Virus record (IMG/VR): IMGVR_UViG_3300032053_000002
Location: 186,001 to 250,000 of that record
Reading direction: 5' to 3' (one strand)
Length of the DNA: 64,000 nt
Shown here: positions 2,889 to 62,268 of the stretch, piece by piece
Position numbering within the stretch: position 1 is the first letter of the stretch
Layout: every line of letters begins with the position of its first letter
Made by a program: the position numbers and the translations under genes
Notes under the pieces: model-generated
Databases searched by the model: none
The model's input: only the letters and a program-made list of their open reading frames with translations
Told to the model about the DNA's origin: nothing

Positions 2889-3428
2889 TTATTCCTCTGA
2901 AAAGTATTCGTTAAATTTATAAAATGCAACATACACCATCGGATCCACTGCGGCTGATATATCAGACGTCCAATAACAATGAGCCATAGCTTCTAACTTA
3001 GTTCCATCTCCAGTTGCTTCTTTCTTTTCTATTTTAGTCAATTCAACCGTAAACAAATAATATACCGTATCAACCGATTTTGTTCCGCGACTAATTCCCA
3101 GAAAAACCATATCTTGCGGCTCAACTTCATACCCGGCTTCTTCTTTTAGTTCTCTTACTGCATCTAGTATTTTACTAGTAGAATCCTTTTCAACTTCGCC
3201 AGTGATACTGCTTATACTTTCGTTCATGCCCCACGGTGGCGTGACTTCACTCCTAAGTAAAAATTCCAGCAAATTAGTTTCTGGATTATACCGATACGGA
3301 AGTATAGCAACAATTTGACCATCGCAACGATCTTCGTGCAAATAGTCATAACCATTTACACCATGTTCTGGGTCTATCATTTTGCGTAGGGAAACCCATT
3401 CGGTTTTACATAATATTTTTTCTTCCAT
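2889..3428 (-). CDS. NUDIX hydrolase
   Basis: GEVE-x-DAVRELKEEAGY Nudix box. Confidence 0.8.
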   Translation of the reverse strand: MEEKILCKTEWVSLRKMIDPEHGVNGYDYLHEDRCDGQIVAILPYRYNPETNLLEFLLRSEVTPPWGMNESISSITGEVEKDSTSKILDAVRELKEEAGYEVEPQDMVFLGISRGTKSVDTVYYLFTVELTKIEKKEATGDGTKLEAMAHCYWTSDISAAVDPMVYVAFYKFNEYFSEE

Positions 3429-3658
3429 TATTTCATACTCCCTGAAAAGATTACGTGTTCTAATATAAAGTTTGGATTAAAGCTGCTTGATAAAATAAGA
3501 TTTTCAAAATTTTCGTTATTGCTAAAAATAAATAATGCGGCTTCGACGAATTTATTAAAAGTTAACTGTCTTTCTACCGATTTATACTTAAACTTACGGT
3601 ATAATTCCGAATTTACCTTTACTGAAGTAATTTGTGTGTATTCTAATTTATTTTCCAT
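3428..3658 (-). CDS. Small possible ribbon-helix-helix DNA-binding protein
   Basis: Start MENKLE after AGGAG; TSVKVNSELYRKFK strand-helix pattern. Confidence 0.45.
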   Translation of the reverse strand: MENKLEYTQITSVKVNSELYRKFKYKSVERQLTFNKFVEAALFIFSNNENFENLILSSSFNPNFILEHVIFSGSMK

Positions 3659-46090: not shown

Positions 46091-49000
46091 TTATTTACGG
46101 GCAGTTTTTGCTAAAAATTCTCCTATACGGGCGCCATTGAGCTTTAGCTCTACTCCGTTTTCCAACCGACTTGCAATGTTATCTAATCTATCAACCACTT
46201 CTCCCATATCTATTTCCGTCGAGGCCACTGTTCCAACGGCTTCAGCCGCAGGTGCTACTACGCCCCCAACCACCCCGCCAACTCCACCTGTCGCGATGAT
46301 TTTTACTGCGTTAGCAGTTTCTTGCAATCCCGGTGCTAACGACGCAAGTTTTTCCAACTGCTCAATAAGTCCACCGCCAGGAAGCAAACCGGTTATAAAT
46401 CCACCAACTCCCGCTACAGCATTCGCCGCTGAAAAAGCGACAAGCGCGGACGATAAAGAAAGTATGGCAACAGAAGCGGTCATAAGACTGGTCGCAATCT
46501 CACCCAATTTAGAAAGTGGGTCTATTATTGCGTTTAATCCAGTAGATAAAATTTGAGTGGAGAATCCAAGTGCGGTAAATGCACCCGCTAGTGCAAACAT
46601 AGCAACTATTCCCGCGCCAAATAAAACCGCTCCGACACCGGATGTTATTAATGCGCCCAACGCGAAGACCGCCGCAGTCAATCCAACTAACACAACCGCT
46701 GCTTTAGCTAAATCTCCCCAACCAACGTCAGTAAACTTTTGCATTGCGATTCCTAAAAGAAGCATTGATCCGGCCATTAAACCAATTGCGACCGCTCCAA
46801 TGATAGCCTTTCCAGCAATTTTGGATAACACTTCAACGGCTACTACTAATCCGACTAAAGAAGCACCCGCCTTTGCCATGTCACCAACACCAACCGTCGC
46901 AAACTCTTGCATTGCTTTTGCCAGAATAAATACTGCTCCCGCAATCATAATCAGAGACGCTCCTGCCGCTAACATCTGAGTAGGTTTCATATCCCCAAAA
47001 ATACTGCCAAGTATTCCGCGTTTCCCGCCGACTTTACCCGCCGCCCCTTTACCGCCAAGAAGACTTCCCAATCCAGTTTTTGCTAAACTAAATGTTTTGA
47101 ATATCCCCCACAGCGCTCCAGCAGCTGCTGCTGCGTAAAGAAGTGCCTTTCCTATTCCAGTTATACTAATACCCGCTTCTTTGCTCACAGTAGTAGCTTT
47201 ATCCCAACTACCCGTTAATTTGTCGATCCCTCCCATAACCCAACCAATACCGCTGGCGACCTTACTAAGCGTGGTCATAACCAGATTAAGCAAAGGTAAT
47301 ATGGTTTTGAGAACAACCGTTCCGATATTCGCCAGAGAGTTTTTTAATTGCGTTAACGGCGACAATACACCTTCTACATCGAGCGCTTCGGATAATGATA
47401 GCCCTTCAACTTCAAACGCGCTCATCGCGTGTGTGGCGACTTTATCTAATTCTTTTGATCGAGAAATCATTTTTCCTAATTCAGAAACAGAAACTCCAAT
47501 AGCATCAGCCATTGCTTTTCTTTGTATAACATTCATTCGTTGAAATTCCGCTTCAGAACCGATCACGTTCACTATTTCTTTTTGAAGACCCATCAAGTCG
47601 CCTTCCAATGCGAGTGCGCGAGCCCTATCCAAGTTGACATTTCTTCCAGTCAAAACCATTGCGTTCATTTGTGCTTCGATGGAACTTTCAAAGTCTAATA
47701 ACTTATCCGCAATCCCAGTTACTGTAGCAAGATTCACTCCGAGTTTTCTGGCCGCAACCGCTGCCATGACGATATTCTGGCCCATTCCTTTCGAGTATTT
47801 TGCGGCTTCTTCTGAACTTTCAGCAATATCTCTCATTACCACACCCGGCGCGACACCGCTAGCTTCCGCAAACTTTTTCGTGATTTTAATCATATTTATC
47901 GCCGTTTCGCTAGATCCGGCAGTCATATTCATAAATGAAGCGACAAGTTTAGCGGATTCATCTGCGGACATACCCAATGCGACAGATATAACGGTCGCAT
48001 CTTCTATCAATTTAGTGTTTATCATATCAAGAGAACCAAACTCACCAACCAACGCTTGAGTTTGTTCGAGCGCTTCTTTTTGAGTTATTCCAAATCTTCC
48101 CAGTGTTGACGCGACAGCTGTTGCCTGGTCATTCAAAACAGTAAATTGCGCTCCAGTTATAGCTGTTGCTTTACGAAAATCTTCACCGGCCTGAACCCAA
48201 TCCACAAAAATCTTTCCAATCCAGGTCGCGATTGCTAAGGCAGCAGTAAGCGGGTTAAAAATAAATCCCATTACTGCGCCTTTTACGCGCTCAATTTTAT
48301 TTCGGAGTTCGTCTATTTTATTAGCCTGTTCTTTATATCCTTCCAAGTACGCATCTTGTATTGTTTTTACTTTTTGTAATTGTTTGATGTTTTCATTAAA
48401 TAGTTCACCGGCCTTTTCTTCGGACAGTACTTTTGCTTTTACTTTATCGAGTATCGATACCGAATCATCAAGAATTTCAGAAGACATTTTTTTAAATTGC
48501 TCAGTAATAACGCCTTCTTCGCGATATGTTTTAATCATATCTATGTGTAAATCCCCAATTGTTTCGAATAGGTCTTTATATGATTCTTCGTCTCTAATCT
48601 TTTTTTCTAATTTTTTTACAATATCTTCCTCAACTTTTTTTATTTTTTCGCGGGATCCCTTACTCCGTTCATCAATTTTTTGTTGTTCTTTTTTGGTTTT
48701 AACAAGTTCTCCACTTAATTTGATTCTCTCTTTTGATTTTTTCGATAATTTTTCAGTAATTTTAAGAAGCTCTCCGGAAAGATTTGTTAGTATTTTTTCA
48801 TAGCCACCCTGTTCCTTAATCATGTCCAGCATACTATCACGTCTATCACCAATGTTATCTAGAGCATGAATAAGTATTCCCAAGTTCTTTATTTCTTTTT
48901 CGTAATTCTTTGAAAGATCGCCCTCTTCTTTTACTTTCATAACAGTTGAAAGCAATTCTTTTGCAAACCCAGTAAGTATTTGTAATTTTTTTGCACTTTC

Positions 49001-49687
49001 ATTATACGTTTCAACCGAATCTTCTTGATAATTTCCAATTTTTTCCGATTCCGACGCAAACCCTTTTATTCTTTCCGTCAATTCATTTATGCGATTTTTA
49101 TCATCAATATTAGCGTTGTCTTTGAGAGCCGTTTCTTTTTTTATGTTTTTTATTGCATCGTTTGTTATTTCATTATATTTTTCAGATATTTTTTCTTTAT
49201 TTTTTATTTCGTTCTTATAGTGGTCATTTTCGGCTTTTGAAACTTTGCTTATATTTTCTATTTGGCTTAAAGATGTCTCGGATATTTCTTTCACTTTATC
49301 TCTAATACTAGTTAGGTAATCAATTCTATCTCGATGTTTCTTTGCAACATCTTCTTCTAAATCCTGGGTTTTTTCAAGATTATTATATATTTCTTTATAT
49401 TTTGAAATTTGGTCGTTTAATGACTCTATCGCCCGAGGTAAAAGCTTAATAGTACTGACCATGCTTTTTAAAATTCCCTTTTCATTAAAGAATTGGGATT
49501 TTTTAAAATCCAATACTTTTTTAACTTTTTTTATAATTCTATCCGTAAGATCTATATCGGCTTCAAGATAGTTGTTAGTTTTTTTACGTTCATCGGTTAA
49601 TTTTTTAGTCAGCTTAACAACTCTATTAAGAGCCTTTTCGTGAGCGTCTAGTAATTTCTTTTGTTTTTCTAAATCTTCCATTGCCAT
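46091..49687 (-). CDS. Tape measure protein
   Basis: 1198 aa, coiled-coil N-half, Ala/Gly-rich hydrophobic repeats; FESSIEAQMNA..NLDRAR. Confidence 0.85.
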   Translation of the reverse strand: MAMEDLEKQKKLLDAHEKALNRVVKLTKKLTDERKKTNNYLEADIDLTDRIIKKVKKVLDFKKSQFFNEKGILKSMVSTIKLLPRAIESLNDQISKYKEIYNNLEKTQDLEEDVAKKHRDRIDYLTSIRDKVKEISETSLSQIENISKVSKAENDHYKNEIKNKEKISEKYNEITNDAIKNIKKETALKDNANIDDKNRINELTERIKGFASESEKIGNYQEDSVETYNESAKKLQILTGFAKELLSTVMKVKEEGDLSKNYEKEIKNLGILIHALDNIGDRRDSMLDMIKEQGGYEKILTNLSGELLKITEKLSKKSKERIKLSGELVKTKKEQQKIDERSKGSREKIKKVEEDIVKKLEKKIRDEESYKDLFETIGDLHIDMIKTYREEGVITEQFKKMSSEILDDSVSILDKVKAKVLSEEKAGELFNENIKQLQKVKTIQDAYLEGYKEQANKIDELRNKIERVKGAVMGFIFNPLTAALAIATWIGKIFVDWVQAGEDFRKATAITGAQFTVLNDQATAVASTLGRFGITQKEALEQTQALVGEFGSLDMINTKLIEDATVISVALGMSADESAKLVASFMNMTAGSSETAINMIKITKKFAEASGVAPGVVMRDIAESSEEAAKYSKGMGQNIVMAAVAARKLGVNLATVTGIADKLLDFESSIEAQMNAMVLTGRNVNLDRARALALEGDLMGLQKEIVNVIGSEAEFQRMNVIQRKAMADAIGVSVSELGKMISRSKELDKVATHAMSAFEVEGLSLSEALDVEGVLSPLTQLKNSLANIGTVVLKTILPLLNLVMTTLSKVASGIGWVMGGIDKLTGSWDKATTVSKEAGISITGIGKALLYAAAAAGALWGIFKTFSLAKTGLGSLLGGKGAAGKVGGKRGILGSIFGDMKPTQMLAAGASLIMIAGAVFILAKAMQEFATVGVGDMAKAGASLVGLVVAVEVLSKIAGKAIIGAVAIGLMAGSMLLLGIAMQKFTDVGWGDLAKAAVVLVGLTAAVFALGALITSGVGAVLFGAGIVAMFALAGAFTALGFSTQILSTGLNAIIDPLSKLGEIATSLMTASVAILSLSSALVAFSAANAVAGVGGFITGLLPGGGLIEQLEKLASLAPGLQETANAVKIIATGGVGGVVGGVVAPAAEAVGTVASTEIDMGEVVDRLDNIASRLENGVELKLNGARIGEFLAKTARK

Positions 49688-49692
49688 TGGAT

Positions 49693-49983
49693 TTATTCTT
49701 CCTTAGATTTTCCTAACGATTTTACATATTCAATATCATCATATTTCGCTAATCTTTGCGGTCTCTGTGCATCCCATTTTTTTGCGTAATTTTTTCCATA
49801 TCTATCTTCCAGATACTTCAATAAATCTTTATAATTTTGATCTATTTTCGACACGATGGCTTTTAATTCCGGATCTTTTTGTATTTTACTTTTAACTCGT
49901 TCCAATTCTTGCCGTTTCATCGAGTCAATGATGCGGTCAATAAATCTAGTAATGATCCCCTCGTTCAGTTGTTTTTTAGGCAT
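49693..49983 (-). CDS. Hypothetical virion-module protein
   Basis: Starts MPKKQLNEG (LxE motif); follows TATTTATA. Confidence 0.55.
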   Translation of the reverse strand: MPKKQLNEGIITRFIDRIIDSMKRQELERVKSKIQKDPELKAIVSKIDQNYKDLLKYLEDRYGKNYAKKWDAQRPQRLAKYDDIEYVKSLGKSKEE

Positions 49984-50037: not shown

Positions 50038-50292
50038 TTATTTTTTTGTTTTAGAAGATGGTTTTATGTTTTTATATCTGGATGGGGATGGAGGCGGCGA
50101 ACTTTTTTTAGTGGATTGTTGTTCTATCTGTTGTTTTTCTTTTTGCTTGGCTTCAGTTAATTTTCGCAGAAAAAATCGTCTTTTATGAACAGGCATAAAA
50201 TACACTTCGGAAAAACCAAATGCGCCCTCGGAATAATAGCACAGGTCAAAGATTTCTTCGTGGAAGGCGACGTTATAACCTTCCGGATGGCC
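50038..50292 (-). CDS. Tail chaperone frameshift extension (84 aa, +1 frame, no canonical start until codon ~30)
   Basis: GHPEGYNVAFHEEIFDLCYYSEGAFGFSEVYFMPVHKRRFFLRKL...; begins right after the T7 run at 50293-50299. Confidence 0.65.
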   Translation of the reverse strand, partial: GHPEGYNVAFHEEIFDLCYYSEGAFGFSEVYFMPVHKRRFFLRKLTEAKQKEKQQIEQQSTKKSSPPPSPSRYKNIKPSSKTKK

Positions 50293-51097
50293 AAAAAAAG
50301 GAGAGTTCCATTGGTATAGTCATTGTTTGCTGATGCATACAGGAATTACATTCGAAATTAAAATCACTACTAATATCCGGGGAAACTCTGGCGATTTCAG
50401 ATCGTAACGCTAATGAGTCTCTACTGAGCATAGTATTGACTAAATTGGTTATAACGGCTTTTTCTTTATTCCCATCGACTTCCGTAATTGAATGTTTTAG
50501 ACGAGTAGTGATTTCAAAGTCGGATTCGGATCTCAACTTTTTTAATCCTTGTAAATCTTTTTCTATTTCTTTATCTTCGATGTGAGTTAGCAGTTTAAAT
50601 TTTACTTGTTTTTTAGACGTTGGTAACTGAAAATCAAATTCTTGTTGACCTTTGACATATGTATTAAAATCGATTTCTTTCGCCTCTAATGACGTTAGAT
50701 CAATCTTAACATCTTTATTAACCGCATTACATTTAGGGCAAGTAACTTCCACAGTATAATCTGACCCATATGCGAGTATTCTTGCGGAAAACATGATACC
50801 GTTCTTATCGCCTAATAATAAAGAATTATAATCAAGTTTGGTTACGATAATAGATTCGAAAAATTTATCCAATACGACACCTTTCTGAATTAAATTCTTT
50901 GATGTCAGAATATCTTCTTCCCGAGCAGTAGGATATTTTAATTCTATTCGCCCGTCCGATTCAAATAGTGGATGCCCCGAAGGATAGAAAAATCCTTTAG
51001 ATGGGAGAGTGACTATTTCAGTCGGATAATCTATTTTGGTTTTCAGAGTTTCCTGATACTCTTTTAATGCTTTTTCTCTTAATTCTTTGTCATTCAT
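50273..51097 (-). CDS. Tail assembly chaperone / baseplate hub assembly protein (gp26-like)
   Basis: LPSKGFFY, PTAREEDILTS, CPKC..C..C, ends FFWP; lies between tube and tape measure. Confidence 0.72.
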   Translation of the reverse strand: MNDKELREKALKEYQETLKTKIDYPTEIVTLPSKGFFYPSGHPLFESDGRIELKYPTAREEDILTSKNLIQKGVVLDKFFESIIVTKLDYNSLLLGDKNGIMFSARILAYGSDYTVEVTCPKCNAVNKDVKIDLTSLEAKEIDFNTYVKGQQEFDFQLPTSKKQVKFKLLTHIEDKEIEKDLQGLKKLRSESDFEITTRLKHSITEVDGNKEKAVITNLVNTMLSRDSLALRSEIARVSPDISSDFNFECNSCMHQQTMTIPMELSFFWPSGRL

Positions 51098-51209
51098 AAA
51101 CTACTCCTTTTGAATTGATAATAACTATTAAACTATAATAAAATCAAATTGTTCCCAAGTATATATATAAATATAACAAAAATGAATTTTTAGTTTCGCC
51201 AGAAAAAAT

Positions 51210-51240
51210 AAAGACCGCTCCACCTGGGTGTGCGGTCTTT
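51210..51240 (-). terminator. Intrinsic terminator after the tail tube gene
   Basis: AAAGACCGC...GCGGTCTTT with T-tract on the minus strand. Confidence 0.72.
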
Positions 51241-51274: not shown

Positions 51275-51769
51275 TTAGAATTCGAGTATCGCCCAATCGT
51301 AATTCAGTGTGACGTTGATTTCTATCGGCGAATCACTGGTGTAATCATAACCACCAAAATCTACGGTTTCCAAAAAGGCACCATATAATTTCCATTTTTC
51401 TACCAAGTCGCCAACCGGCCCTAATCCATATAAATCCAAATCTTTTTTATAAAAGTCTTGGTATCCATCGCGACCAGTTAAACTTTCATGATGCAATCTA
51501 AGCCATTCCATTATAGCTTGTGCGGCGGATGGGACTACCGGATCAATCAAAGTAATACTGATCGAATTCCAGGTCCATTTTCCAGCGAATTTTCTCTGCA
51601 TGTTAATATAATCAATCGGAATTACATTGGTTTGAGGTTGCGGTCTTTGAGCCGTTTTAATTACCCATGACGGAATTCCATCGATATACATAATAAACCT
51701 GTGCATCTGCTTTGGCTGGAAACGGTCTATCATCAATTCGTTTGCTTCTACCATGCGTTCTGTAGGCAT
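51275..51769 (-). CDS. gp19: Tail tube protein (gp19-like)
   Basis: FQPKQMHRF, W..ITL.DPV, WKLYGAF, YDWAILEF. Confidence 0.88.
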   Translation of the reverse strand: MPTERMVEANELMIDRFQPKQMHRFIMYIDGIPSWVIKTAQRPQPQTNVIPIDYINMQRKFAGKWTWNSISITLIDPVVPSAAQAIMEWLRLHHESLTGRDGYQDFYKKDLDLYGLGPVGDLVEKWKLYGAFLETVDFGGYDYTSDSPIEINVTLNYDWAILEF

Positions 51770-51779
51770 TTTATTTCTC

Positions 51780-52661
51780 CTAAATTTTTATTCTTATAAA
51801 ATTACATCCAAGAAATTTTTTTATTTCTTCTTGTCTATAAATATCTTTTTCTCTCAATTTTCCATCAATATAATGATGTTTTTCATCAATTTCTATTACT
51901 ATATTCTTTTCTTTACTATATCCGTCTACCCAATATCCTAACTCTTTAATACAGTATTCGCCACCATTCTCGGCGTGTTGAAGATCCGTAATCCCAAGCT
52001 CTTTTGCTTTTTGCTCAAGTATTGGAATGGCGGTTGGATTATATCCAGGAATTATTTGAGAGCCATTAAATTTATTTTTTTCAATCCTTTTTATAGCAAT
52101 TAATCTTAACTTTTCAATATTCTCCCTCGTTAATTTTTTCCCAGTGTTTGCCCGGCCAATTTTTATTTTAGTTTCAATACTTCTCGGTTTCCTCCAACAA
52201 GGATTTTTTTCCCCAATTTTTGTCATACTTAATTTTTTTCGATGCTCTTCTGATAATTTTTTCCCAAAGAACGGGTGATTTTCCATCTGTTTAGATATAC
52301 TCATTCTTTTTCTTGATTCTGGGTTTTTCGCCGGATTTTCATTCCCATACATTCTCTTGCTCAATATCATTCTACAATTCTCCGAAACTTTATGCCCCCG
52401 AAGAGATTCACCAATCTTTCGTTTAACTTCTTCGGTACGATGTTTTCCAAACATTCCATTTTTTTCTCCACGCTGAGCATCACTCATTCTTTTTCTCGTT
52501 TCATTTGAACGTTTTACGCCCCACCCAGGATTTTTCTTTCCGAGTTTAGCACAAACTCCGCACAATGAATTAGCTTTATTCGCGCGATTTAATGAGCTCT
52601 TTTGAGAATATTTTAATTCTGTTTTACATCCTGAGCATTCTCTTATAAATTGTCTATCCAT
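51780..52661 (-). mobile_element. NUMOD3-repeat EDxHD/Vsr-like homing endonuclease
   Basis: GEKNGMFGKHRTEE repeats; YWVDGY..VIEIDEKHH..RQ. Confidence 0.8.
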
Positions 52662-53000: not shown

Positions 53001-53852
53001 TTATAAATATTTCTTCAGAAAGGTTATAAGTTTAGGAAGTTGTTCTTTTTTTATAAAAATTATTTCCCAGCGAGTTACTCCGTCCTGTTTCAGTACTATA
53101 TCGTTTTCATTATCAACATACGCAATAATTGGCATCCCTTCCCCGACTTCTTTTGGATTGATGGTCTGCAAATCTTTTTTTTCTTTAATCAAATTTTTTA
53201 ATTTCATTATGTTATCTCCCAGCCCTTTTTTCATTCTGAATCTTGTCGCCGCGGGAATCTCGCCAGGTAAGGCTCCAGGAACCCTATGTCGCGACCCCAT
53301 TCCCGGCGGAACTTTTACGTTACGTTTCAACATCGGCGACACCATGTGTTGAGCCCCCTTTTCAGAATCAGATCTTTCTTCACTTCCAACATAATCTTTT
53401 AGTGGAATGAACTGAATTTTATTTTTTCCGGCAGAAGAATCCCATTTATCGTTATTCCTTTTACTGTTGGGATTTATCATTTTTTCATGTTTACTTATAA
53501 TAACTTCTATACGATATTTCGGGTCGTTAGAAATTTTTATATTTTTGCCAAGTTTTATATTTATTTCGGATTCCAGATCAGCGGCAACTTTTTTTATCAT
53601 ATTCTTTGGCGGATATTGCCAGAAAGAAATTATTTTCTTATTTGTCCATACTCTCCCAGGATATTTAAAATTTTCTCGATCTGCATGGGAGTGCATATCA
53701 TCATAGTATTGACGAATATTATTATGTGTCCCACTACTAACTCTCATTTTGTTTTTATAGTATCCAAAGCAAATTGCGCTATTGTCCCCCCAACTCAATC
53801 CCTTTTTGTCGATAAAATCCGGACTTTCTAATATTTTTTTTAATTTAATCAT
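53001..53852 (-). CDS. Probable head-internal protein with a nested in-frame start at 53207
   Basis: N-terminal MIKLKKILE and internal MKLKNLIKE with its own GGAG. Confidence 0.55.
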   Translation of the reverse strand: MIKLKKILESPDFIDKKGLSWGDNSAICFGYYKNKMRVSSGTHNNIRQYYDDMHSHADRENFKYPGRVWTNKKIISFWQYPPKNMIKKVAADLESEINIKLGKNIKISNDPKYRIEVIISKHEKMINPNSKRNNDKWDSSAGKNKIQFIPLKDYVGSEERSDSEKGAQHMVSPMLKRNVKVPPGMGSRHRVPGALPGEIPAATRFRMKKGLGDNIMKLKNLIKEKKDLQTINPKEVGEGMPIIAYVDNENDIVLKQDGVTRWEIIFIKKEQLPKLITFLKKYL

Positions 53853-53876
53853 TTTTTATTTTCTCACCTATCTCCT

Positions 53877-53939
53877 TATAAATATAAAGATTATTTGTTT
53901 TTTTAGAACCGAGTGTTTTTTTATTTTTTTATATTTATA
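53877..53939. promoter_or_regulatory. Divergent pair of TATTTATA motifs
   Basis: 53877-53884 on the minus strand and 53932-53939 on the plus strand, each upstream of its gene. Confidence 0.65.
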
Positions 53940-53970
53940 CACTACGTTTAAAATAAAAGAGGGAATAAAA

Positions 53971-55068
53971 ATGGAAAGATGGCAAAAAATTCTGCAAAAA
54001 AGTTTAACGAAACCCGAACAAATTGCTAAAAAATTTAATTTACCGTTATCGGAAATTCAACAAGTAAATAAATCATTTAAGACTCGTATCACTCCGCATT
54101 TCGCCGCATTGATAAAAGAAAACGGCGACGCACTGTATCGTCAAGTTATACCTGATAAAAACGAATTATTAGAAGGAGATTCTGACGAAGACCCGTTAGG
54201 AGAAGACGGAGATTCTCCCGTCCACAACATCGTTCATCGCTATCCAGATAGAGTATTATTTTTAATCAGCCATGTATGCGCATCTTATTGCCGTTTCTGC
54301 ACGCGCAAAAGAAAAGTAGGCGACGCATCAAAAATCAGTTGGAAATATGTTGATGAAGGGATCGAATATATCTCCAATCATTCGGAGATTCGCGACGTTA
54401 TTTTATCTGGTGGAGATCCATTACTTTTATCTGATGACAAAATAGAATATGTTTTACGAAAACTTCGGGATATTCCGCACATTGACATCATCCGCATTCA
54501 CACGCGCGTTCTCGCGTTTTTACCGCAGCGCATCACGGCGAAACTATTAAAAATGCTAAAGAAGTATCATCCACTGTTTATGAACGTGCATTTTAATCAT
54601 CCAGACGAATTGCATCCGATGGCAGTTAAAGCATTAAATAGATTGTCAGATTCAGGAATACCGTTGGGGAGTCAAACCGTTTTGCTCAAAGGAGTTAATG
54701 ATGATCCGATTATCATGAAAAAATTGATGCAAAAGTTATTAAAAGCCAGAGTAAAACCGTATTACATTTATCAGGCCGATAGAGTGTTTGGAACGGATCA
54801 CTTTCGTACTAGTGTTGAACGTGGTTTAGAAATTATGGAAAATTTAAGGGGGTGGACGTCGGGATTGGCGAATCCTTATTACGTAATAGACGCGCCAGGT
54901 GGTGGTGGCAAGATACCACTTTTACCTAACTACGTTATTCGCCTCACCGATGATGAAGTCGTGTTGAGAAACTATAAAGGGAAAATGTTTAGATATAAAC
55001 AATCTGATAACGAACAAATAAAAGTGGAAGAATTGATAGGCGAAAATTTAGACTTATCGTTGGTTTAA
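53971..55068 (+). CDS. kamA: Lysine 2,3-aminomutase (KamA family radical SAM, PLP)
   Basis: HRYPDR, CASYCRFC, ILSGGDPL, YQADR, DAPGGGGKIP; start MERWQ after GAGGG. Confidence 0.92.
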   Translation: MERWQKILQKSLTKPEQIAKKFNLPLSEIQQVNKSFKTRITPHFAALIKENGDALYRQVIPDKNELLEGDSDEDPLGEDGDSPVHNIVHRYPDRVLFLISHVCASYCRFCTRKRKVGDASKISWKYVDEGIEYISNHSEIRDVILSGGDPLLLSDDKIEYVLRKLRDIPHIDIIRIHTRVLAFLPQRITAKLLKMLKKYHPLFMNVHFNHPDELHPMAVKALNRLSDSGIPLGSQTVLLKGVNDDPIIMKKLMQKLLKARVKPYYIYQADRVFGTDHFRTSVERGLEIMENLRGWTSGLANPYYVIDAPGGGGKIPLLPNYVIRLTDDEVVLRNYKGKMFRYKQSDNEQIKVEELIGENLDLSLV

Positions 55069-58661: not shown

Positions 58662-60491
58662 TTACCTGCTATATATCAACTCATATTTTAGGTTTCCGCA
58701 ATCCCAAACTCTATCGTATTCGTTTAGTTGCATATTTTGCCATTCGGTAAGGTTAGGATCGTATTTTTTTAATTTCTTATGTAAGACTTTTTTCCTAAAA
58801 TTAAAACGATGTATTCTACTACTGCCGTTCATATTAAAATACCAATAACTAGGAGATGTTTCTGATACTTTTGTAAATCCCATCTTATTGTATAGATTGC
58901 TGCCGGATTTTGTCCAACGGCGATCGGCGAAACTTATTATTTTTTCTGGAGAATATTCGCGCACAAAAAAATTGAGTAATTTACTAGCTAATCCATTTGA
59001 CCGGACAGATGTTGCAAATCTCATCAATTCATATTCTCCTTTATTTTTTCCAGACCCAACAGACCTTTTTGATTTTCCAAAAGTCATCACGGCAACCAAC
59101 TCATTATCATAAAATGCACCTAATTTTATTTTGGTATTGTCACTTCCTTGTATGTGATTTTCGTTTAGGAATTTGTTTTTTGATGCGTTGTCTATTTCTT
59201 TTATATCACAATTTCTAGCATAAACTTTTCTGGTTTCATCGGACAATATGTATTCTAATCTGTTTTTTACTATATTTTGTTTTTCTATCCATTCATCTTC
59301 AAATATCTGAATTAAATGAATTCCCTTGCTCTCGGCTAATGAAGTCTTACTTAGATGATATTTTTTATCTTTGTTTCCATTTATTTCGGAATGCCAAAAT
59401 ATACCATTATATTCTATACCAATTTTTTTATCTGGAATGTAAAAATCTAGCTCCTTCCCGTTCAATGTTTTTCTATCATTTCTTATTATTTCGCCAGAAT
59501 ATATTTTCTTCAAGAAGTTATTTATTTCGTCTTCGGCTTTAGAAACACCGCTCCACAATAACGGATAACACGTTAAACATCTTGGAATGCGCCCATTTTC
59601 CAAGCTGCCAAAAAATATATTATTGCACTTTTTACAACGAAATTCATATTTTTTATTTTTAACTCCCTGATAATCATTTAAGGTAAATAACACTTCAACG
59701 TATTCGCGTATTTTAGGTGAGCTTAAAAAATTATTATACACCGTTTCAAATAATGATTTTTTAATCTGCGCCATTCCTTCTTCGGTTTGAGTAAAAGAAT
59801 TTGCACCGTATTTCTCTTGGTTGGTTTTCTTTATTTTTGCAACCATCATTTGTTTAATCATTGGGTCGTTAGCTTTCAACGATTGTAGTTTACTGGTTTT
59901 ATTAGATGTGGTTTTTTTTATTCCATATTTAACAATGTAATCCAATGGCAAGATATTATGTTTTTTTAGATGAGTATTGCTCAATTTAAAAAAATGTTCT
60001 TGACAAATTTCGCATTTAATTCTATTATCTGGAATTAGTAGTTTATCTTTTCTATCCTTTTTTATATGATATAATTTCCAGAGATATTTATATCGCGGGT
60101 ATTTATTCAGAAAGTCGTCTACGTTTATGTTGTGAATACTTTTTAGATGCGCAGTAAACACGCCAGATTTATTCTGTGTATCAGAAGTTTTCCATTCTTG
60201 GCACATTGGGCAGGAAAAACTTTCTTTTTTAATCGCGTTCTTTATTATGAAATTTTCTATGAAAAACGGAGAATTGTGCAAAGATGTTGAATGTGTAGTC
60301 AATGCTCCAGATAAATTATTTATATCAATACTTTCCCAATCGCATAATTTACATTTTATTATTTTTGAATTATCGTTGATTTTCCTCTTTACTGTTCGTT
60401 GTTTATTATATTCTTTGTCGGAAAACTTGCATTCATTTGAACAGTATATTCTTTTTTTGAAAATTTCTTTTTTACATATCTTACACTTCAT
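58662..60491 (-). mobile_element. Hef-like endonuclease: Zn fingers + Vsr-like nuclease + Mom/GNAT-like C-terminal domain
   Basis: ELDFY..IEYNGIFWHS..IFEDEW; ARNC..FL.ENHIQG..ELMRFA..ASKLL..SFADRRW; start MKCK after AAGGAG. Confidence 0.72.
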
Positions 60492-60573
60492 TTTCACTCC
60501 TTTAGTAGTTATTTTGACCTTATATGTATAGATATGAAATAAAATAAAAAAAGTTCCATTTTTTGTAAAATAA

Positions 60574-60599
60574 AAAACCCGCTCCGAAGAGCGGGTTTT
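60574..60599 (-). terminator. Intrinsic terminator after the major capsid gene (UUCG loop)
   Basis: AAAACCCGCTC-CGAA-GAGCGGGTTTT. Confidence 0.88.
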
Positions 60600-60636
60600 C
60601 ATTAGATTTTATAGTTTAACTGTTAAGTGTCAGAAA

Positions 60637-62268
60637 TTAGACGGTTTCCAACCCATGAACTACTATTTTTCCGTAAAATTCCGGACGCACGATTTTCTTT
60701 GCGTATCGCGTCATAACCCCGCGTCTTGGCGTGAAGTTATCCGGGTCGTATACAAGAGGAGTCATGATTAATGGAATGTATGGAGCATAAACAGCGCCAG
60801 TTTCCAAGAAACTAGTTCCTCTGAATCCGACTAGAATTACGTTTTCAACCATATAAGGATTCTTATATACTGTAAAACGTGAATTCAACATACCGACTTT
60901 TTGAACGCCCATCGCGAACGACATGGCGGTTCCATCAGTATCAGCCGCATATCCAGGAATAGATTCAATAATCGTAGCAATATCCGGTGATAAAACTATG
61001 AAGTTTGCACCACCGCGAAGAGTCAATTGATGAATCTTGTTGGATACTTTTTGAATCTTGTTGCCAAGAGTTTGATACCATTCGTTCTTTGTACCAGTGT
61101 GAGAAGTTGCATCATAGAACGACGCTTTATCGGAAGAGATTTCCCACCCAGGAATGGCTGACCAGTATTCTTTAGTAACGGCATTCACCATTAACATATC
61201 AAGAATTTCGAGGTCAATTTCCATACCAATATATTCGCTTAACAGAGCGGTAAGCTCGGCTTCAGCGTCTATTGAATGGTATGCATTCAAGTCTTGGGCA
61301 AGTTCAGGAGTCCATACGGCTTTCATCTTACGAGTTTTCGAGACGATGGATTCTTGAGCGACCGATAGGTCAATTTCAGGAATGTCAAGTTTTAATGCAC
61401 TACCGGATTCAGACGTATCTTCGAAATCACCGCGAGCAGTAGCCGTTGGTTGTTTATGATAACGAATTACATACGAACTTCCAGAAAAATCAGTTAATTT
61501 GGCACTACCAGAAACAACCCACATAATATTTGCACCGACAATTTTGGTAAATTGTGGCAAATAAGAATGAATACTACTACCAGAAACGGAAAATGCGCGA
61601 ACGCCTTCCAAATCCAGATCGGATAATGAACCGGTGTTATAGAAGATTTTTACTAGCTGGCCCGCAGAAAGTGAAGCTGAAACTAATCCGGTTGTAAAAT
61701 CAATATCAGCGTATGCACACGCAGCAGATGCAAATGTATTTGTGGCAGCCGTTGCGCCCCAAATAGGTATACCACCAACACTAGTATCATTGACGGAATA
61801 ACCGAATTTTCCAGCGCCATAGAGACCGCCGACCGTATCATCAGTTGTTCCCGGGGTTTTTCCAACACCTGAACCACCATATACGGATTTGTTCTGGGTA
61901 AACCCAGGTTGATGACCGCTTCCATATTTAAAATCGATATAGAATACGAGTCCAGAAGGAAGATTCATCGGCTGAATAGAAACGAATTCCTTAGCAGCCA
62001 CTTCGCCGAAAATACGGCGAACCAATGGAAGAGCGACACCAGACCATTGTTCAGCACCACCCCCGCCGGTTTGCGATACTTCATGCAATACCTGACGAGC
62101 TTGGTTTTCCAAAAGGATTGCCATTCCGTATACTTCATGTTCTTTTTCCAGACCATCAAGTAAACCGGTTGGCTCCCATTTCTTTACTAAACCACGAGTC
62201 TGCTCAATAAGAGCGTCGTAAGGGTTTTTCCCTTCCATTAACTTTTTTAAGTTGAGCAATGTACTCAT
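60637..62268 (-). CDS. gp23: Major capsid protein (T4 gp23-like)
   Basis: SIQPMNLPSGLVF, KTRKMKAVWTPELAQDLNAYH, YAPYIPL, GVMTRYA. Confidence 0.96.
   Translation of the reverse strand: MSTLLNLKKLMEGKNPYDALIEQTRGLVKKWEPTGLLDGLEKEHEVYGMAILLENQARQVLHEVSQTGGGGAEQWSGVALPLVRRIFGEVAAKEFVSIQPMNLPSGLVFYIDFKYGSGHQPGFTQNKSVYGGSGVGKTPGTTDDTVGGLYGAGKFGYSVNDTSVGGIPIWGATAATNTFASAACAYADIDFTTGLVSASLSAGQLVKIFYNTGSLSDLDLEGVRAFSVSGSSIHSYLPQFTKIVGANIMWVVSGSAKLTDFSGSSYVIRYHKQPTATARGDFEDTSESGSALKLDIPEIDLSVAQESIVSKTRKMKAVWTPELAQDLNAYHSIDAEAELTALLSEYIGMEIDLEILDMLMVNAVTKEYWSAIPGWEISSDKASFYDATSHTGTKNEWYQTLGNKIQKVSNKIHQLTLRGGANFIVLSPDIATIIESIPGYAADTDGTAMSFAMGVQKVGMLNSRFTVYKNPYMVENVILVGFRGTSFLETGAVYAPYIPLIMTPLVYDPDNFTPRRGVMTRYAKKIVRPEFYGKIVVHGLETV

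What the first reader, a model, noticed from the sequence alone, without database searches (positions are those of the whole stretch)
50038..51097. Probable +1 (or -2) programmed frameshift on a U7 run in the tail chaperone gene
Seen: the chaperone ends TCC TTT TTT TGG CCA...TAA (SFFWPSGRL*). The +1 frame opens after a TGA just upstream and reads FF-GHPEGYNVAFHEEIFDLCYYSEG... for 84 codons to 50038. Its first GTG/ATG is about 30 codons in, after the most protein-like segment. tRNA-Phe can re-pair on the seven U's at 50293-50299. The fusion would be about 352 aa. Established: lambda G/GT (-1) and Mu (-2) tail chaperones upstream of tape-measure genes use programmed frameshifts; T4 itself does not. 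Inference: a G/GT-type switch in a T4-superfamily-like phage using a non-canonical shift direction.
Basis: partly seen in the sequence, partly recalled or inferred. Interest (0 to 1): 0.75.

Follow-up and report, generated by a model that had tools for sequence, protein, structure and literature searches.

The report
Frameshifted tail chaperone gene, +1 direction
A jumbo phage makes a short and a long version of its tail-assembly chaperone from one gene, most likely by letting the ribosome slip one base forward on a run of seven U's; thousands of uncultured relatives do the same, and databases list the second half as a separate unnamed gene.

Summary
A 274-codon gene (51097..50273, minus strand) ends ...SFFWPSGRL*. 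An 84-codon +1 frame with no usable start continues from the U7 run (50299..50293) to 50038.

The split is not a sequencing error. Contigs from four metagenome runs carry SNPs here but no indel. In 73 of 79 non-identical related loci the same +1 architecture holds.

The 12-nt core TTTTTTTGGCCT is nearly invariant, synonymous positions included. Flanking third-codon positions vary freely. The +1 peptide (FFGLxPEYKxxLHEEIF...VYNMPIYLRRFY) is conserved from the first codon after the run.

One subclade lost the U run and carries the extension in the -1 frame behind a canonical A_AAU_UUC heptamer. Another clade has the two parts fused in frame, with the junction reading SFFG as a +1 shift predicts.

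The gene is a PF12322 (T4 gp26/gp51) protein lying between the tube and tape-measure genes. Its best fold matches are the three solved tail assembly chaperones. T4 makes the short form (gp26) and the long form (gp51) from two paralogous genes. This phage has only one such gene.

A ribosomal +1 slip on UUU_U is favoured over -2 and over transcriptional slippage. Prior art probably overlaps (Vladimirov et al. 2022, which I could not read).

The parts
50273..51097 (-). Zero-frame gene for the short chaperone form (TAC-N, gp26-like), 274 aa, ending ...SFFWPSGRL*
   Evidence: Pfam PF12322, E 1.3e-11, above the curated cut-off. phrog_150. AF2 model pLDDT 92. Fold matches to the solved tail assembly chaperones.
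50293..50299 (-). U7 slip site. Zero-frame codons are UUU (50299-50297), UUU (50296-50294) and U of UGG (50293). Proposed shift: P-site tRNA-Phe moves from 50296-50294 to 50295-50293.
   Evidence: TTTTTTTGGCCT is found in 58 of 79 non-identical loci; nearly all other +1 variants keep YTT_T or TTT_C. About 2 bits per position, including synonymous sites. No indel in contigs from four runs.
50273..50292 (-). Dual-coding overlap. Zero frame reads (W)PSGRL + UAA; +1 frame reads GHPEGYN. The zero-frame stop lies inside the conserved +1 'Y-N/K/R' codons.
   Evidence: The zero-frame tail after FFWP varies in length and sequence. The +1 reading GLxPEY(K/R/N) is conserved.
50038..50292 (-). +1-frame extension, 84 codons plus stop. 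It forms the C-terminal domain of the long form (TAC-NC, gp51-like C domain): a helical core followed by a K/E-rich and then a P/S/K-rich tail.
   Evidence: Profile search found 1357 representatives at 50% identity and 3861 clusters at 90% identity. Natural in-frame fusions exist. Colinear with the T4 gp51 C-terminus, hhalign probability 81%, E 1.2e-5. Helices predicted in the fused homologue.
50262..50284 (-). Hairpin 8 nt downstream of the U run: GGAAGGU / GCCUUCC, with a 9-nt loop that contains the zero-frame UAA. Its role is uncertain.
   Evidence: At -9.7 kcal/mol it is more stable than any other 40-nt window of the same gene. Analogous but non-homologous hairpins occur in 16 of 69 loci. 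There is no consensus structure.
51275..51769 (-). Tail tube gene (164 aa), immediately upstream
   Evidence: phrog_4542 'tail tube protein', E 1.2e-25. A tube homologue lies upstream of the chaperone gene in 81 loci.
46091..49687 (-). Tape measure protein gene (1198 aa), downstream
   Evidence: BLASTP E 2e-20 to the annotated tape measure protein of Flavobacterium phage immuto. Same position as the annotated TMPs of SP-15 and LIS04.
49693..49983 (-). Small 96-aa ORF between the chaperone extension and the tape measure gene. It has its own GGGAGA SD and ATG. Function unknown.
   Evidence: no significant family. A small ORF occupies the same position in Mel-JY01.

Best explanation
The gene at 51097..50273 encodes the tail assembly chaperone of a roughly 293-kb myovirus-type phage.

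Most ribosomes read it in frame and terminate at UAA 50275..50273. This gives a 274-aa short form, equivalent to lambda gpG, to TAC-N and to T4 gp26.

A minority of ribosomes slip while tRNA-Phe sits in the P site on the second UUU (50296..50294) and the A site waits for the single Trp codon UGG. The tRNA moves one base forward onto UUU 50295..50293. GGC (Gly) is read next and translation continues for 84 codons to 50038. This gives a 352-aa long form with junction ...ELSFF-GHPEGYN..., equivalent to lambda gpGT, to TAC-NC and to T4 gp51.

By analogy with lambda, the short and long forms together coat the tape measure protein (gene 49687..46091), and the extra C-terminal domain recruits tube subunits (gene 51769..51275).

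Shown here:
- the sequence anatomy;
- conservation of the site and of the +1 peptide;
- absence of an independent start;
- the chaperone fold and gene position;
- homology of the extension to the gp51 C-terminus.

Inferred, not shown:
- that the shift is ribosomal;
- the exact slipping codon;
- the efficiency of the shift;
- the binding partners.
For: Conservation of the site and the extension:
- Of 79 non-identical related loci, 73 have a +1 extension of 67-102 codons (or one that runs off the end of the contig), beginning exactly at the T run.
- TTTTTTTGGCCT carries about 2 bits per position, including third-codon positions. Flanking third positions carry 0.1-0.4 bits.
- The T at the third position of Pro codon CCT is explained only by the Leu codon of the +1 frame.
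- The +1 frame is closed 3 or fewer codons upstream of the run in 35 of 73 loci, so the shift must happen within about 6-8 codons.

No independent start:
- 33 of 69 loci have no ATG/GTG/TTG at or before the conserved FFG.
- Only 2 of the 36 loci with such a codon have an SD-like sequence.

Variants that keep +1 re-pairing but break the homopolymer:
- TTT CTT TGG in 7 loci, arising at least 4 times on the tree. This is the CUU_U slip of prfB.
- TTC TTT T, CTT TTT T, GCT TTT T, TTT CTA.

Other configurations in the same family:
- A monophyletic subclade (100/98 support) has TTC TTC TGG, with the homologous extension in the -1 frame behind a canonical A_AAU_UUC heptamer. The family therefore uses ribosomal slip sites.
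- Natural in-frame fusions of 293-318 aa read ...SFFGITPQYKPAIHKEIF. They keep the same 11-residue G-to-H spacing as the +1 product.

The long form can only come from recoding:
- Only one PF12322 gene exists in the 292,723-bp genome.

Chaperone identity:
- Tube - gene - TMP synteny.
- The top three of 48,161 PDB chains are 3klu, 3fgx and 2ob9, the three solved tail assembly chaperones.
- T4 gp26 and gp51 both carry PF12322, and gp51 has the extra C-terminus, colinear with the fused homologues.

Not an assembly error:
- Contigs from four metagenome runs show SNPs but no indel.
Against: - There is no protein or RNA evidence. Nothing here measures the shift or shows the junction peptide.
- The A-site codon is a sense codon (UGG, or UAC in 4 loci), not a stop or a demonstrably rare codon.
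- An SD-like stimulator is present in only 26 of 69 loci, and at -9/-10 rather than the short spacing of prfB.
- No conserved RNA structure was found. The window region as a whole folds no better than shuffles (z = -0.38).
- A run of seven T's is also a possible site of RNA polymerase slippage. This cannot be excluded for the window itself.
- The tested interaction between the extension and the tube protein gave no answer.
Confidence: 0.68

Rival explanations
1. Transcriptional slippage. RNA polymerase stutters on the T7 run and produces a minority of mRNAs with six U's. In these the two frames are joined and translated normally. The products are the same but the mechanism differs.
For: - The homopolymer is conserved at nucleotide level in 64 of 73 +1 loci, and is T8 in L027.
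- A paper citing Vladimirov et al. 2022 mentions poly-T signals in TAC-N genes of T4-like phages. [quoted passage not shown]
- No strong ribosomal stimulator was found.
Against: - At least 12 loci keep the +1 extension with an interrupted or short run (TTTCTTT, TTCTTTT, TTTCTATTC, GCTTTTT, TTTCTTCTC), where polymerase realignment is implausible.
- TTTCTTT arose at least 4 times independently.
- The -1 subclade uses A_AAU_UUC, which has no homopolymer run.
- From general knowledge: seven T's is at the low end for efficient slippage by bacterial RNA polymerase, and slippage usually gives insertions as well, which here lead to a dead-end frame.
Confidence: 0.17
2. Ribosomal -2 frameshift on the U7 run. 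tRNA-Phe slips back two bases, giving ...SFFF-GHPEG... with one extra Phe, as proposed for phage Mu.
For: - U7 allows perfect re-pairing two bases back.
- For TTT CTT T, tRNA-Leu(GAG) could also pair with UUC two bases back (inference).
Against: - TTC TTT TGG (L043), GCT TTT TGG (L078) and CTT TTT TGG (L033) do not allow good -2 re-pairing but do allow +1.
- Natural fusions have two, not three, hydrophobic residues before Gly.
Confidence: 0.08
3. Two independent genes. The downstream ORF is translated on its own from an internal or non-canonical start, and there is no fusion protein.
For: - Gene callers list thousands of these ORFs as separate 56-130-aa proteins.
- 36 of 69 loci have some ATG/GTG/TTG upstream of FFG.
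Against: - In the window the first possible start is 32 codons in, after the best-conserved block.
- 33 of 69 loci have none before FFG, and only 2 have an SD-like sequence.
- Conservation starts exactly at the slip site.
- In-frame fusions and gp51 show that the domain belongs on the end of the chaperone.
Confidence: 0.03
4. Artefact or decay. The split is a homopolymer sequencing or assembly error in an originally continuous gene, or a pseudogene.
For: In-frame fused homologues exist.
Against: - Contigs from four runs with different SNPs all have T7 and no indel.
- The same split is found in 73 of 79 diverged loci, and in thousands of database proteins that all end FFWP plus 1-5 aa.
Confidence: 0.01

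Closest known systems
Lambda gpG/gpGT and the conserved tail assembly chaperone frameshift (Levin et al. 1993; Xu, Hendrix & Duda 2004; as cited)
   Same: - Two overlapping ORFs between the tube (major tail) gene and the tape measure gene.
- The second ORF has no start of its own.
- A short form and a rarer C-terminally extended form are produced.
- The fold matches the solved chaperones.
   Different: - The shift is +1 on U_UUU_UUU_GG rather than -1 on an X_XXY_YYZ heptamer.
- The protein is much larger (274 aa against about 110-140).
- It carries a four-Cys zinc-ribbon-like insertion.
- It belongs to Pfam PF12322, not to the lambda G family.
T4 gp26 and gp51 ('hub assembly chaperones', PMC3004832 Table 2; identified as the T4-like tail assembly chaperones by Vladimirov, Gautam & Davidson 2022, not read here)
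   Same: - Same Pfam family, PF12322.
- gp26 corresponds to the short form and ends EFFELL, compared with SFFWP here.
- gp51 corresponds to the long form. Its extra C-terminus is colinear with the extension.
   Different: - T4 encodes the two forms as two separate, divergently transcribed paralogous genes with no frameshift.
- This phage has a single gene and needs recoding.
- In T4 the genes are not next to the tube gene.
prfB (RF2) +1 programmed frameshift, CUU_UGA_C
   Same: - P-site tRNA slips forward one base onto UUU.
- The CUU_U variant occurs in 7 relatives.
   Different: - The A-site codon is a sense codon (UGG), not a stop.
- There is no consistent SD-like element at short spacing.
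- There is no autoregulatory logic.
Listeria phage PSA +1 frameshifts in capsid and tail genes (Zimmer et al. 2003, cited) and the Mu -2 chaperone shift
   Same: Phage structural genes that use non-(-1) recoding to make C-terminally extended forms.
   Different: Different genes, protein families and slip sites. PSA is a siphovirus. The Mu shift is -2.
-1 frameshift on GTTTTT in the chaperone genes of Vandenendeviridae and Andersonviridae myoviruses (PMC12846349)
   Same: - A T-rich slip site at the 3' end of TAC-N in myoviruses.
- The downstream ORF is annotated as a hypothetical protein.
- The case was made by the same kind of comparative argument.
   Different: The direction is -1, and the gene family and phage lineages differ.

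Membership tests
Frameshifted tail assembly chaperone (G/GT type) | Gene lies between the tail tube/major tail gene and the tape measure gene | tested here: met
   Tube gene at 51769..51275 (phrog_4542). TMP gene at 49687..46091. Same order in immuto, Mel-JY01, SP-15 and LIS04 and in 81 loci.
Frameshifted tail assembly chaperone (G/GT type) | Second ORF overlaps the end of the first in another frame, lacks its own start, and is conserved as protein | tested here: met
Frameshifted tail assembly chaperone (G/GT type) | Conserved slippery sequence inside the overlap | tested here: met
   U7 or YUU_U in the +1 group, A_AAU_UUC in the -1 subclade, U_UUU_UUC in PA5oct. The site is not the canonical -1 heptamer in the window.
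Frameshifted tail assembly chaperone (G/GT type) | Chaperone fold (spiral-forming TAC fold of HK97 gp13, YqbN, Rbstp2171) | tested here: met
   These three chains are ranks 1-3 of 48,161 (Z 5.7, 5.4, 4.9). 2ob9 is also top by Foldseek and on the second look. Their identity as chaperones comes from PMC9603447. The absolute Z scores are modest.
Frameshifted tail assembly chaperone (G/GT type) | Both forms are made, the long form at a few per cent, and both are needed for tail assembly | not testable with these tools
   Needs proteomics or genetics. The phage is known only from metagenomes.
Frameshifted tail assembly chaperone (G/GT type) | Short part binds the tape measure protein; the extension binds the tube protein | tested here: inconclusive
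   Complex prediction of extension plus tube: score 0.00, 'no answer'. Binding to the TMP was not tested.
Pfam PF12322 T4_baseplate (T4 gp26/gp51) | Match to the family model above the curated cut-off | tested here: met
   45.1 bits against a cut-off of 24.5, covering residues 50-269 and ending at the slip site. 49.1 bits in the genome search.
Pfam PF12322 T4_baseplate (T4 gp26/gp51) | Long form carries the gp51-type C-terminal extension | tested here: met
   Fused homologues against the gp51 family: hhalign probability 81%, E 1.2e-5, colinear to gp51 residue 242. The extension alone against gp51 is not significant.
prfB-type +1 frameshift | In-frame stop codon in the A site and an SD-like element about 3 nt upstream of the slip codon | tested here: not met
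   The A-site codon is UGG. An SD-like sequence is present in only 26 of 69 loci, at -9/-10.
Transcriptional slippage site | Uninterrupted A or T run long enough for polymerase realignment, conserved across the family | tested here: inconclusive
   T7 in the window and in 64 of 73 +1 loci. The run is interrupted or short in at least 12 loci that keep the extension. No RNA reads were available.

The most novel reading that the evidence does not exclude
UUU_UGG (U7-GG) is an efficient, stimulator-independent +1 ribosomal slip site of a class not yet characterised in bacteria. On this reading, one chaperone family has switched repeatedly between four ways of making its long form: +1 frameshift, -1 frameshift, in-frame fusion and gene duplication. 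That would make it a natural series for studying how recoding signals evolve. A lineage-specific hairpin holding the zero-frame stop codon in its loop may tune the ratio of the two forms.
Probability: 0.3. Interest if true: 0.7.

Novelty: new variant of a known kind. Interest (0 to 1): 0.5.

Why it matters
- **Annotation.** At least 3861 protein clusters (90% identity) in public databases are listed as separate hypothetical proteins. They are really the C-terminal domain of a chaperone made by recoding. The upstream gene is widely labelled 'baseplate hub' although it has the fold, the position and the two-form logic of a tail assembly chaperone.
- **Biology.** The finding links the puzzling T4 pair gp26/gp51 to the universal G/GT rule. 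T4 solved by gene duplication the problem that its distant jumbo-phage relatives solve by frameshifting.
- **Recoding.** A forward shift on a U run before a sense codon is conserved over protein divergence down to about 45% identity. Relatives that switched to -1 or to a fusion offer a compact natural data set on how slip sites arise and are replaced.
- **Prior art.** Much of the general idea is probably already in Vladimirov et al. 2022, so the gain is in the direction, the site, the breadth and the evolutionary switches, not in the concept.

Tried and rejected
- **Family searches on the extension.** Pfam and PHROGs scans of the 84-aa extension found nothing.
- **Extension against T4 gp51.** hhalign of the extension profile alone against T4 gp51 or its family was not significant (probability 0.1%). 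Only the full-length natural fusions gave a significant colinear match.
- **Binding to the tube protein.** Complex prediction of extension plus tube scored 0.00 and counts as no evidence either way.
- **Conserved RNA structure.** RNAalifold on 69 aligned slip regions found no consensus pairs. The 141-nt window region folds like shuffles (z = -0.38).
- **SD-like stimulator.** Present in only 26 of 69 loci.
- **Foldseek alone.** It gave no significant PDB match.
- **Literature.** Eight full-text searches found no paper describing a +1 shift in gp26-like genes. The most relevant paper (Virology 566:9, 2022) is not held.
- **Rejected explanations.** Homopolymer error and independent initiation.
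- **Phage tRNAs.** No phage-encoded tRNA that could bear on the slip was found in the window.
- **Sheath gene.** A search for the sheath gene in the window, using the immuto and Mel-JY01 sheath proteins, found nothing.

Full report
**What is in the window**

On the minus strand, an ORF runs from ATG 51097 to TAA 50275..50273 (274 aa) and ends TCC TTT TTT TGG CCA TCC GGA AGG TTA TAA, which reads SFFWPSGRL*. The seven T's occupy 50299..50293.

One base forward, the +1 frame opens after a TGA seven codons upstream of the run. It reads ...SPFF GHPEGYNVAFHEEIFDLCYYSEGAFGFSEVYFMPVHKRRFFLRKLTEAKQKEKQQ... to TAA 50040..50038. That is 84 codons counted from GGC 50292. Its first possible start codon is the GTG at 50205, 32 codons in.

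**Context**

The window belongs to a 292,723-bp virus record, about 91% complete, so this is a jumbo phage. The gene order on the minus strand is:
- tail tube gene, 51769..51275 (phrog_4542, E 1e-25);
- a strong terminator-like hairpin;
- the gene in question;
- its +1 extension;
- a 96-aa ORF;
- a 1198-aa protein homologous to an annotated tape measure protein (E 2e-20).

The 274-aa protein matches Pfam PF12322 'T4_baseplate' (45 bits, cut-off 24.5), and the match ends at residue 269, right at the slip site. It also matches phrog_150 'baseplate hub'.

**Not an artefact**

A word-index search returned 7644 homologues. The best 120 are all 254-294 aa long and all end FFWP (rarely FFYP, FLWP or FFWI) followed by 1-5 variable residues. 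Contigs from four separate sediment metagenome runs cover the stretch. They carry up to 13 substitutions and no insertion or deletion.

**Comparative test**

I fetched 91 related loci: cultured phages Mel-JY01 and immuto, an uncultured 484-kb phage, and 88 IMG/VR contigs.
- Of 79 non-identical loci with the C-terminal motif, 73 have a +1 frame open for 67-102 codons from the motif, or open to the end of the contig in a few truncated loci.
- Its translation is conserved from the first codon: FFGLxPEYKxxLHEEIFxLxYxGKGGFTxxxVYNMPIYLRxFYxKxL, followed by a K/E-rich and then a P/S/K-rich tail.
- Seven further loci that my motif filter missed show the same arrangement with variant sites.
- The +1 frame is closed by a stop 3 or fewer codons upstream of the run in 35 of 73 loci. 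The change of frame therefore has to occur inside a window of 6-8 codons.
- In 33 of 69 loci there is no ATG, GTG or TTG at or before FFG. Of the 36 loci that have one, only 2 have an SD-like sequence.

**The site**
- TTTTTTTGGCCT occurs in 58 of 79 loci, TTTCTTTGGCCT in 7, TTTTTTTACCCT in 4 and TTTTTTTGGCCA in 2, one of which is the window.
- Information content is 1.5-2.0 bits at all 12 positions, synonymous positions included. Third-codon positions on either side carry 0.1-0.4 bits.
- The T at the third position of the Pro codon is explained by the Leu codon (CTN) of the +1 frame. This is direct evidence that the +1 frame is read immediately after the run.
- Nearly every +1 variant offers a P-site codon that can re-pair one base forward: UUU_U, CUU_U (the prfB slip) or UUU_C. 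The one unclear case is L085 (UUU CUU CUC).
- Several variants cannot support a -2 shift (TTC TTT T, GCT TTT T).
- Several cannot support polymerase stuttering (TTTCTTT, TTTCTATTC, TTTCTTCTC).

**Switches of strategy**

Six loci form a clade with 100/98 support. They have TTC TTC TGG, so no slippery UUU_U remains, and the homologous extension lies in the -1 frame. All six have the canonical -1 heptamer A_AAT_TTC two codons upstream.

More distant family members behave likewise:
- Bacillus phage SP-15 and Listeria phage LIS04 have an unannotated +1 extension of about 75 codons. It fills the 'gap' between the gene labelled 'baseplate hub' and the tape measure gene.
- Pseudomonas jumbo phage PA5oct has a 78-codon -1 extension behind U_UUU_UUC.

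A profile of the extension finds 1357 representative proteins. Most are small ORFs called by gene finders. About ten of the top 150 are natural in-frame fusions of 293-318 aa, with junctions such as ...LDHSFFGITPQYKPAIHKEIF. These have two, not three, hydrophobic residues before Gly. They keep the same 11-residue spacing from Gly to the conserved His as the predicted +1 product.

**What the protein is**

The AlphaFold model of the 274-aa form is confident (pLDDT 92). Foldseek finds nothing significant, but its top hit is the HK97 tail assembly chaperone, which a second look scores at Z 5.2.

A search of 48,161 PDB representatives that does not depend on Foldseek puts 3klu (YqbN), 3fgx (Rbstp2171) and 2ob9 (HK97) at ranks 1-3. 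According to PMC9603447, these are the three solved phage tail assembly chaperones. The absolute Z scores are modest (4.9-5.7), but the coincidence is not plausible by chance.

T4 gp26 (208 aa) and gp51 (249 aa) both match PF12322 over its full length, and gp51 has about 48 extra C-terminal residues. The alignment of natural fusions matches the gp51 family colinearly through that extension (hhalign probability 81%, E 1.2e-5).

T4 gp26 ends EFFELL* directly before gene 25 and has no extension. T4 therefore encodes the short and long forms as two paralogous genes. The window's genome has only one PF12322 gene and must recode to make the long form.

**Mechanism**

I favour a ribosomal +1 slip of tRNA-Phe from UUU to UUU with UGG waiting in the A site. 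After the slip, the A-site codon is GGC.

No universal stimulator was found:
- an SD-like sequence occurs in only 26 of 69 loci;
- there is no consensus RNA structure.

There is, however, an excess of strong hairpins starting 3-8 nt after the run. Sixteen of 69 loci are at or below the 5th percentile of windows from their own gene. The hairpins differ in sequence and register, and their loop usually contains the zero-frame stop. The window's own hairpin (50284..50262, -9.7 kcal/mol) is among them. I leave this unexplained.

**Prior art**

Frameshifted tail chaperones are classical (Xu et al. 2004). [quoted passage not shown] I could not read that paper. Citing papers say two things about it:
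- some T4-like phages carry a short and a long gene instead of frameshifting;
- poly-T signals occur in TAC-N genes of T4-like phages.

The concept is therefore known. The additions here are:
- the +1 direction and its site;
- the exclusion of the alternative explanations;
- the breadth: about 7600 homologues of the short gene and 3861 clusters of the extension ORF, all labelled 'hypothetical protein';
- the repeated switches between +1, -1, fusion and duplication.

**Verdict**

It is a new variant of a known kind, of moderate interest.

Noticed in passing
window 51200-51240 (minus strand): A strong terminator-like hairpin (-18.2 kcal/mol, z -4.0) followed by UUUAUUUUUU lies between the tube gene and the chaperone gene. 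Bacillus phage SP-15 has an annotated rho-independent terminator at the same place. It may set a low chaperone-to-tube expression ratio. The simple consensus scan did not list it.
   Followed up: partly
window 50262-50284 (minus strand); L013, L014, L017, L051, L054 and others: Hairpins just downstream of the slip site, with the zero-frame stop codon in the loop. The sequences and registers differ between clades. 16 of 69 loci are at or below the 5th percentile of windows from their own gene. No consensus structure.
   Followed up: partly
L031, L039, L052, L065, L066, L089: A monophyletic subclade carries the homologous extension in the -1 frame behind A_AAT_TTC. The U run is replaced by TTC TTC, as if the +1 site had been selected away.
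   Followed up: yes
L093 (Listeria phage LIS04) about 3170-3430; L094 (Bacillus phage SP-15) about 3150-3390; L095 (Pseudomonas phage PA5oct) about 3320-3560: Cultured phages with unannotated frameshift extensions after the gene labelled 'baseplate hub'. The extension is in the +1 frame in the two Thornevirus genomes (TTT TTT AGT and TTT TTT CAC) and in the -1 frame in PA5oct (T_TTT_TTC).
   Followed up: partly
P0155, P0185, P0192, P0198, P0199, P0243, P0251, P0260: Natural in-frame fusions of the chaperone and its extension (293-318 aa). Seven of them form a separate clade. These phages would make only the long form.
   Followed up: partly
window 51780-52661 (minus strand): A NUMOD3 homing-endonuclease gene lies directly upstream of the tube gene, where relatives have the sheath gene. 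No homologue of the immuto or Mel-JY01 sheath protein was detected anywhere in the window.
   Followed up: partly
window 53782-55068 (plus strand): A radical-SAM protein with a lysine-2,3-aminomutase C-terminal domain (PF04055 + PF12544). It is the only sizeable plus-strand gene in this region. Relatives of this enzyme family modify elongation factor P; any link to translation here is pure speculation.
   Followed up: no
window 58662-60602 (minus strand): A 646-aa protein next to the major head protein gene (60637-62268). It matches PHROG families annotated as 'homing endonuclease' and 'HNH endonuclease' (E 5e-113 and 6e-92) and has a weak, sub-threshold Mom-like C-terminal match.
   Followed up: no
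P0271-P0362 (T4 gp51 homologues): Precomputed annotation gives gp51 homologues a second Pfam family, PF28602, besides PF12322. That family is absent from the local Pfam copy, and none of the extension ORFs carries it.
   Followed up: no
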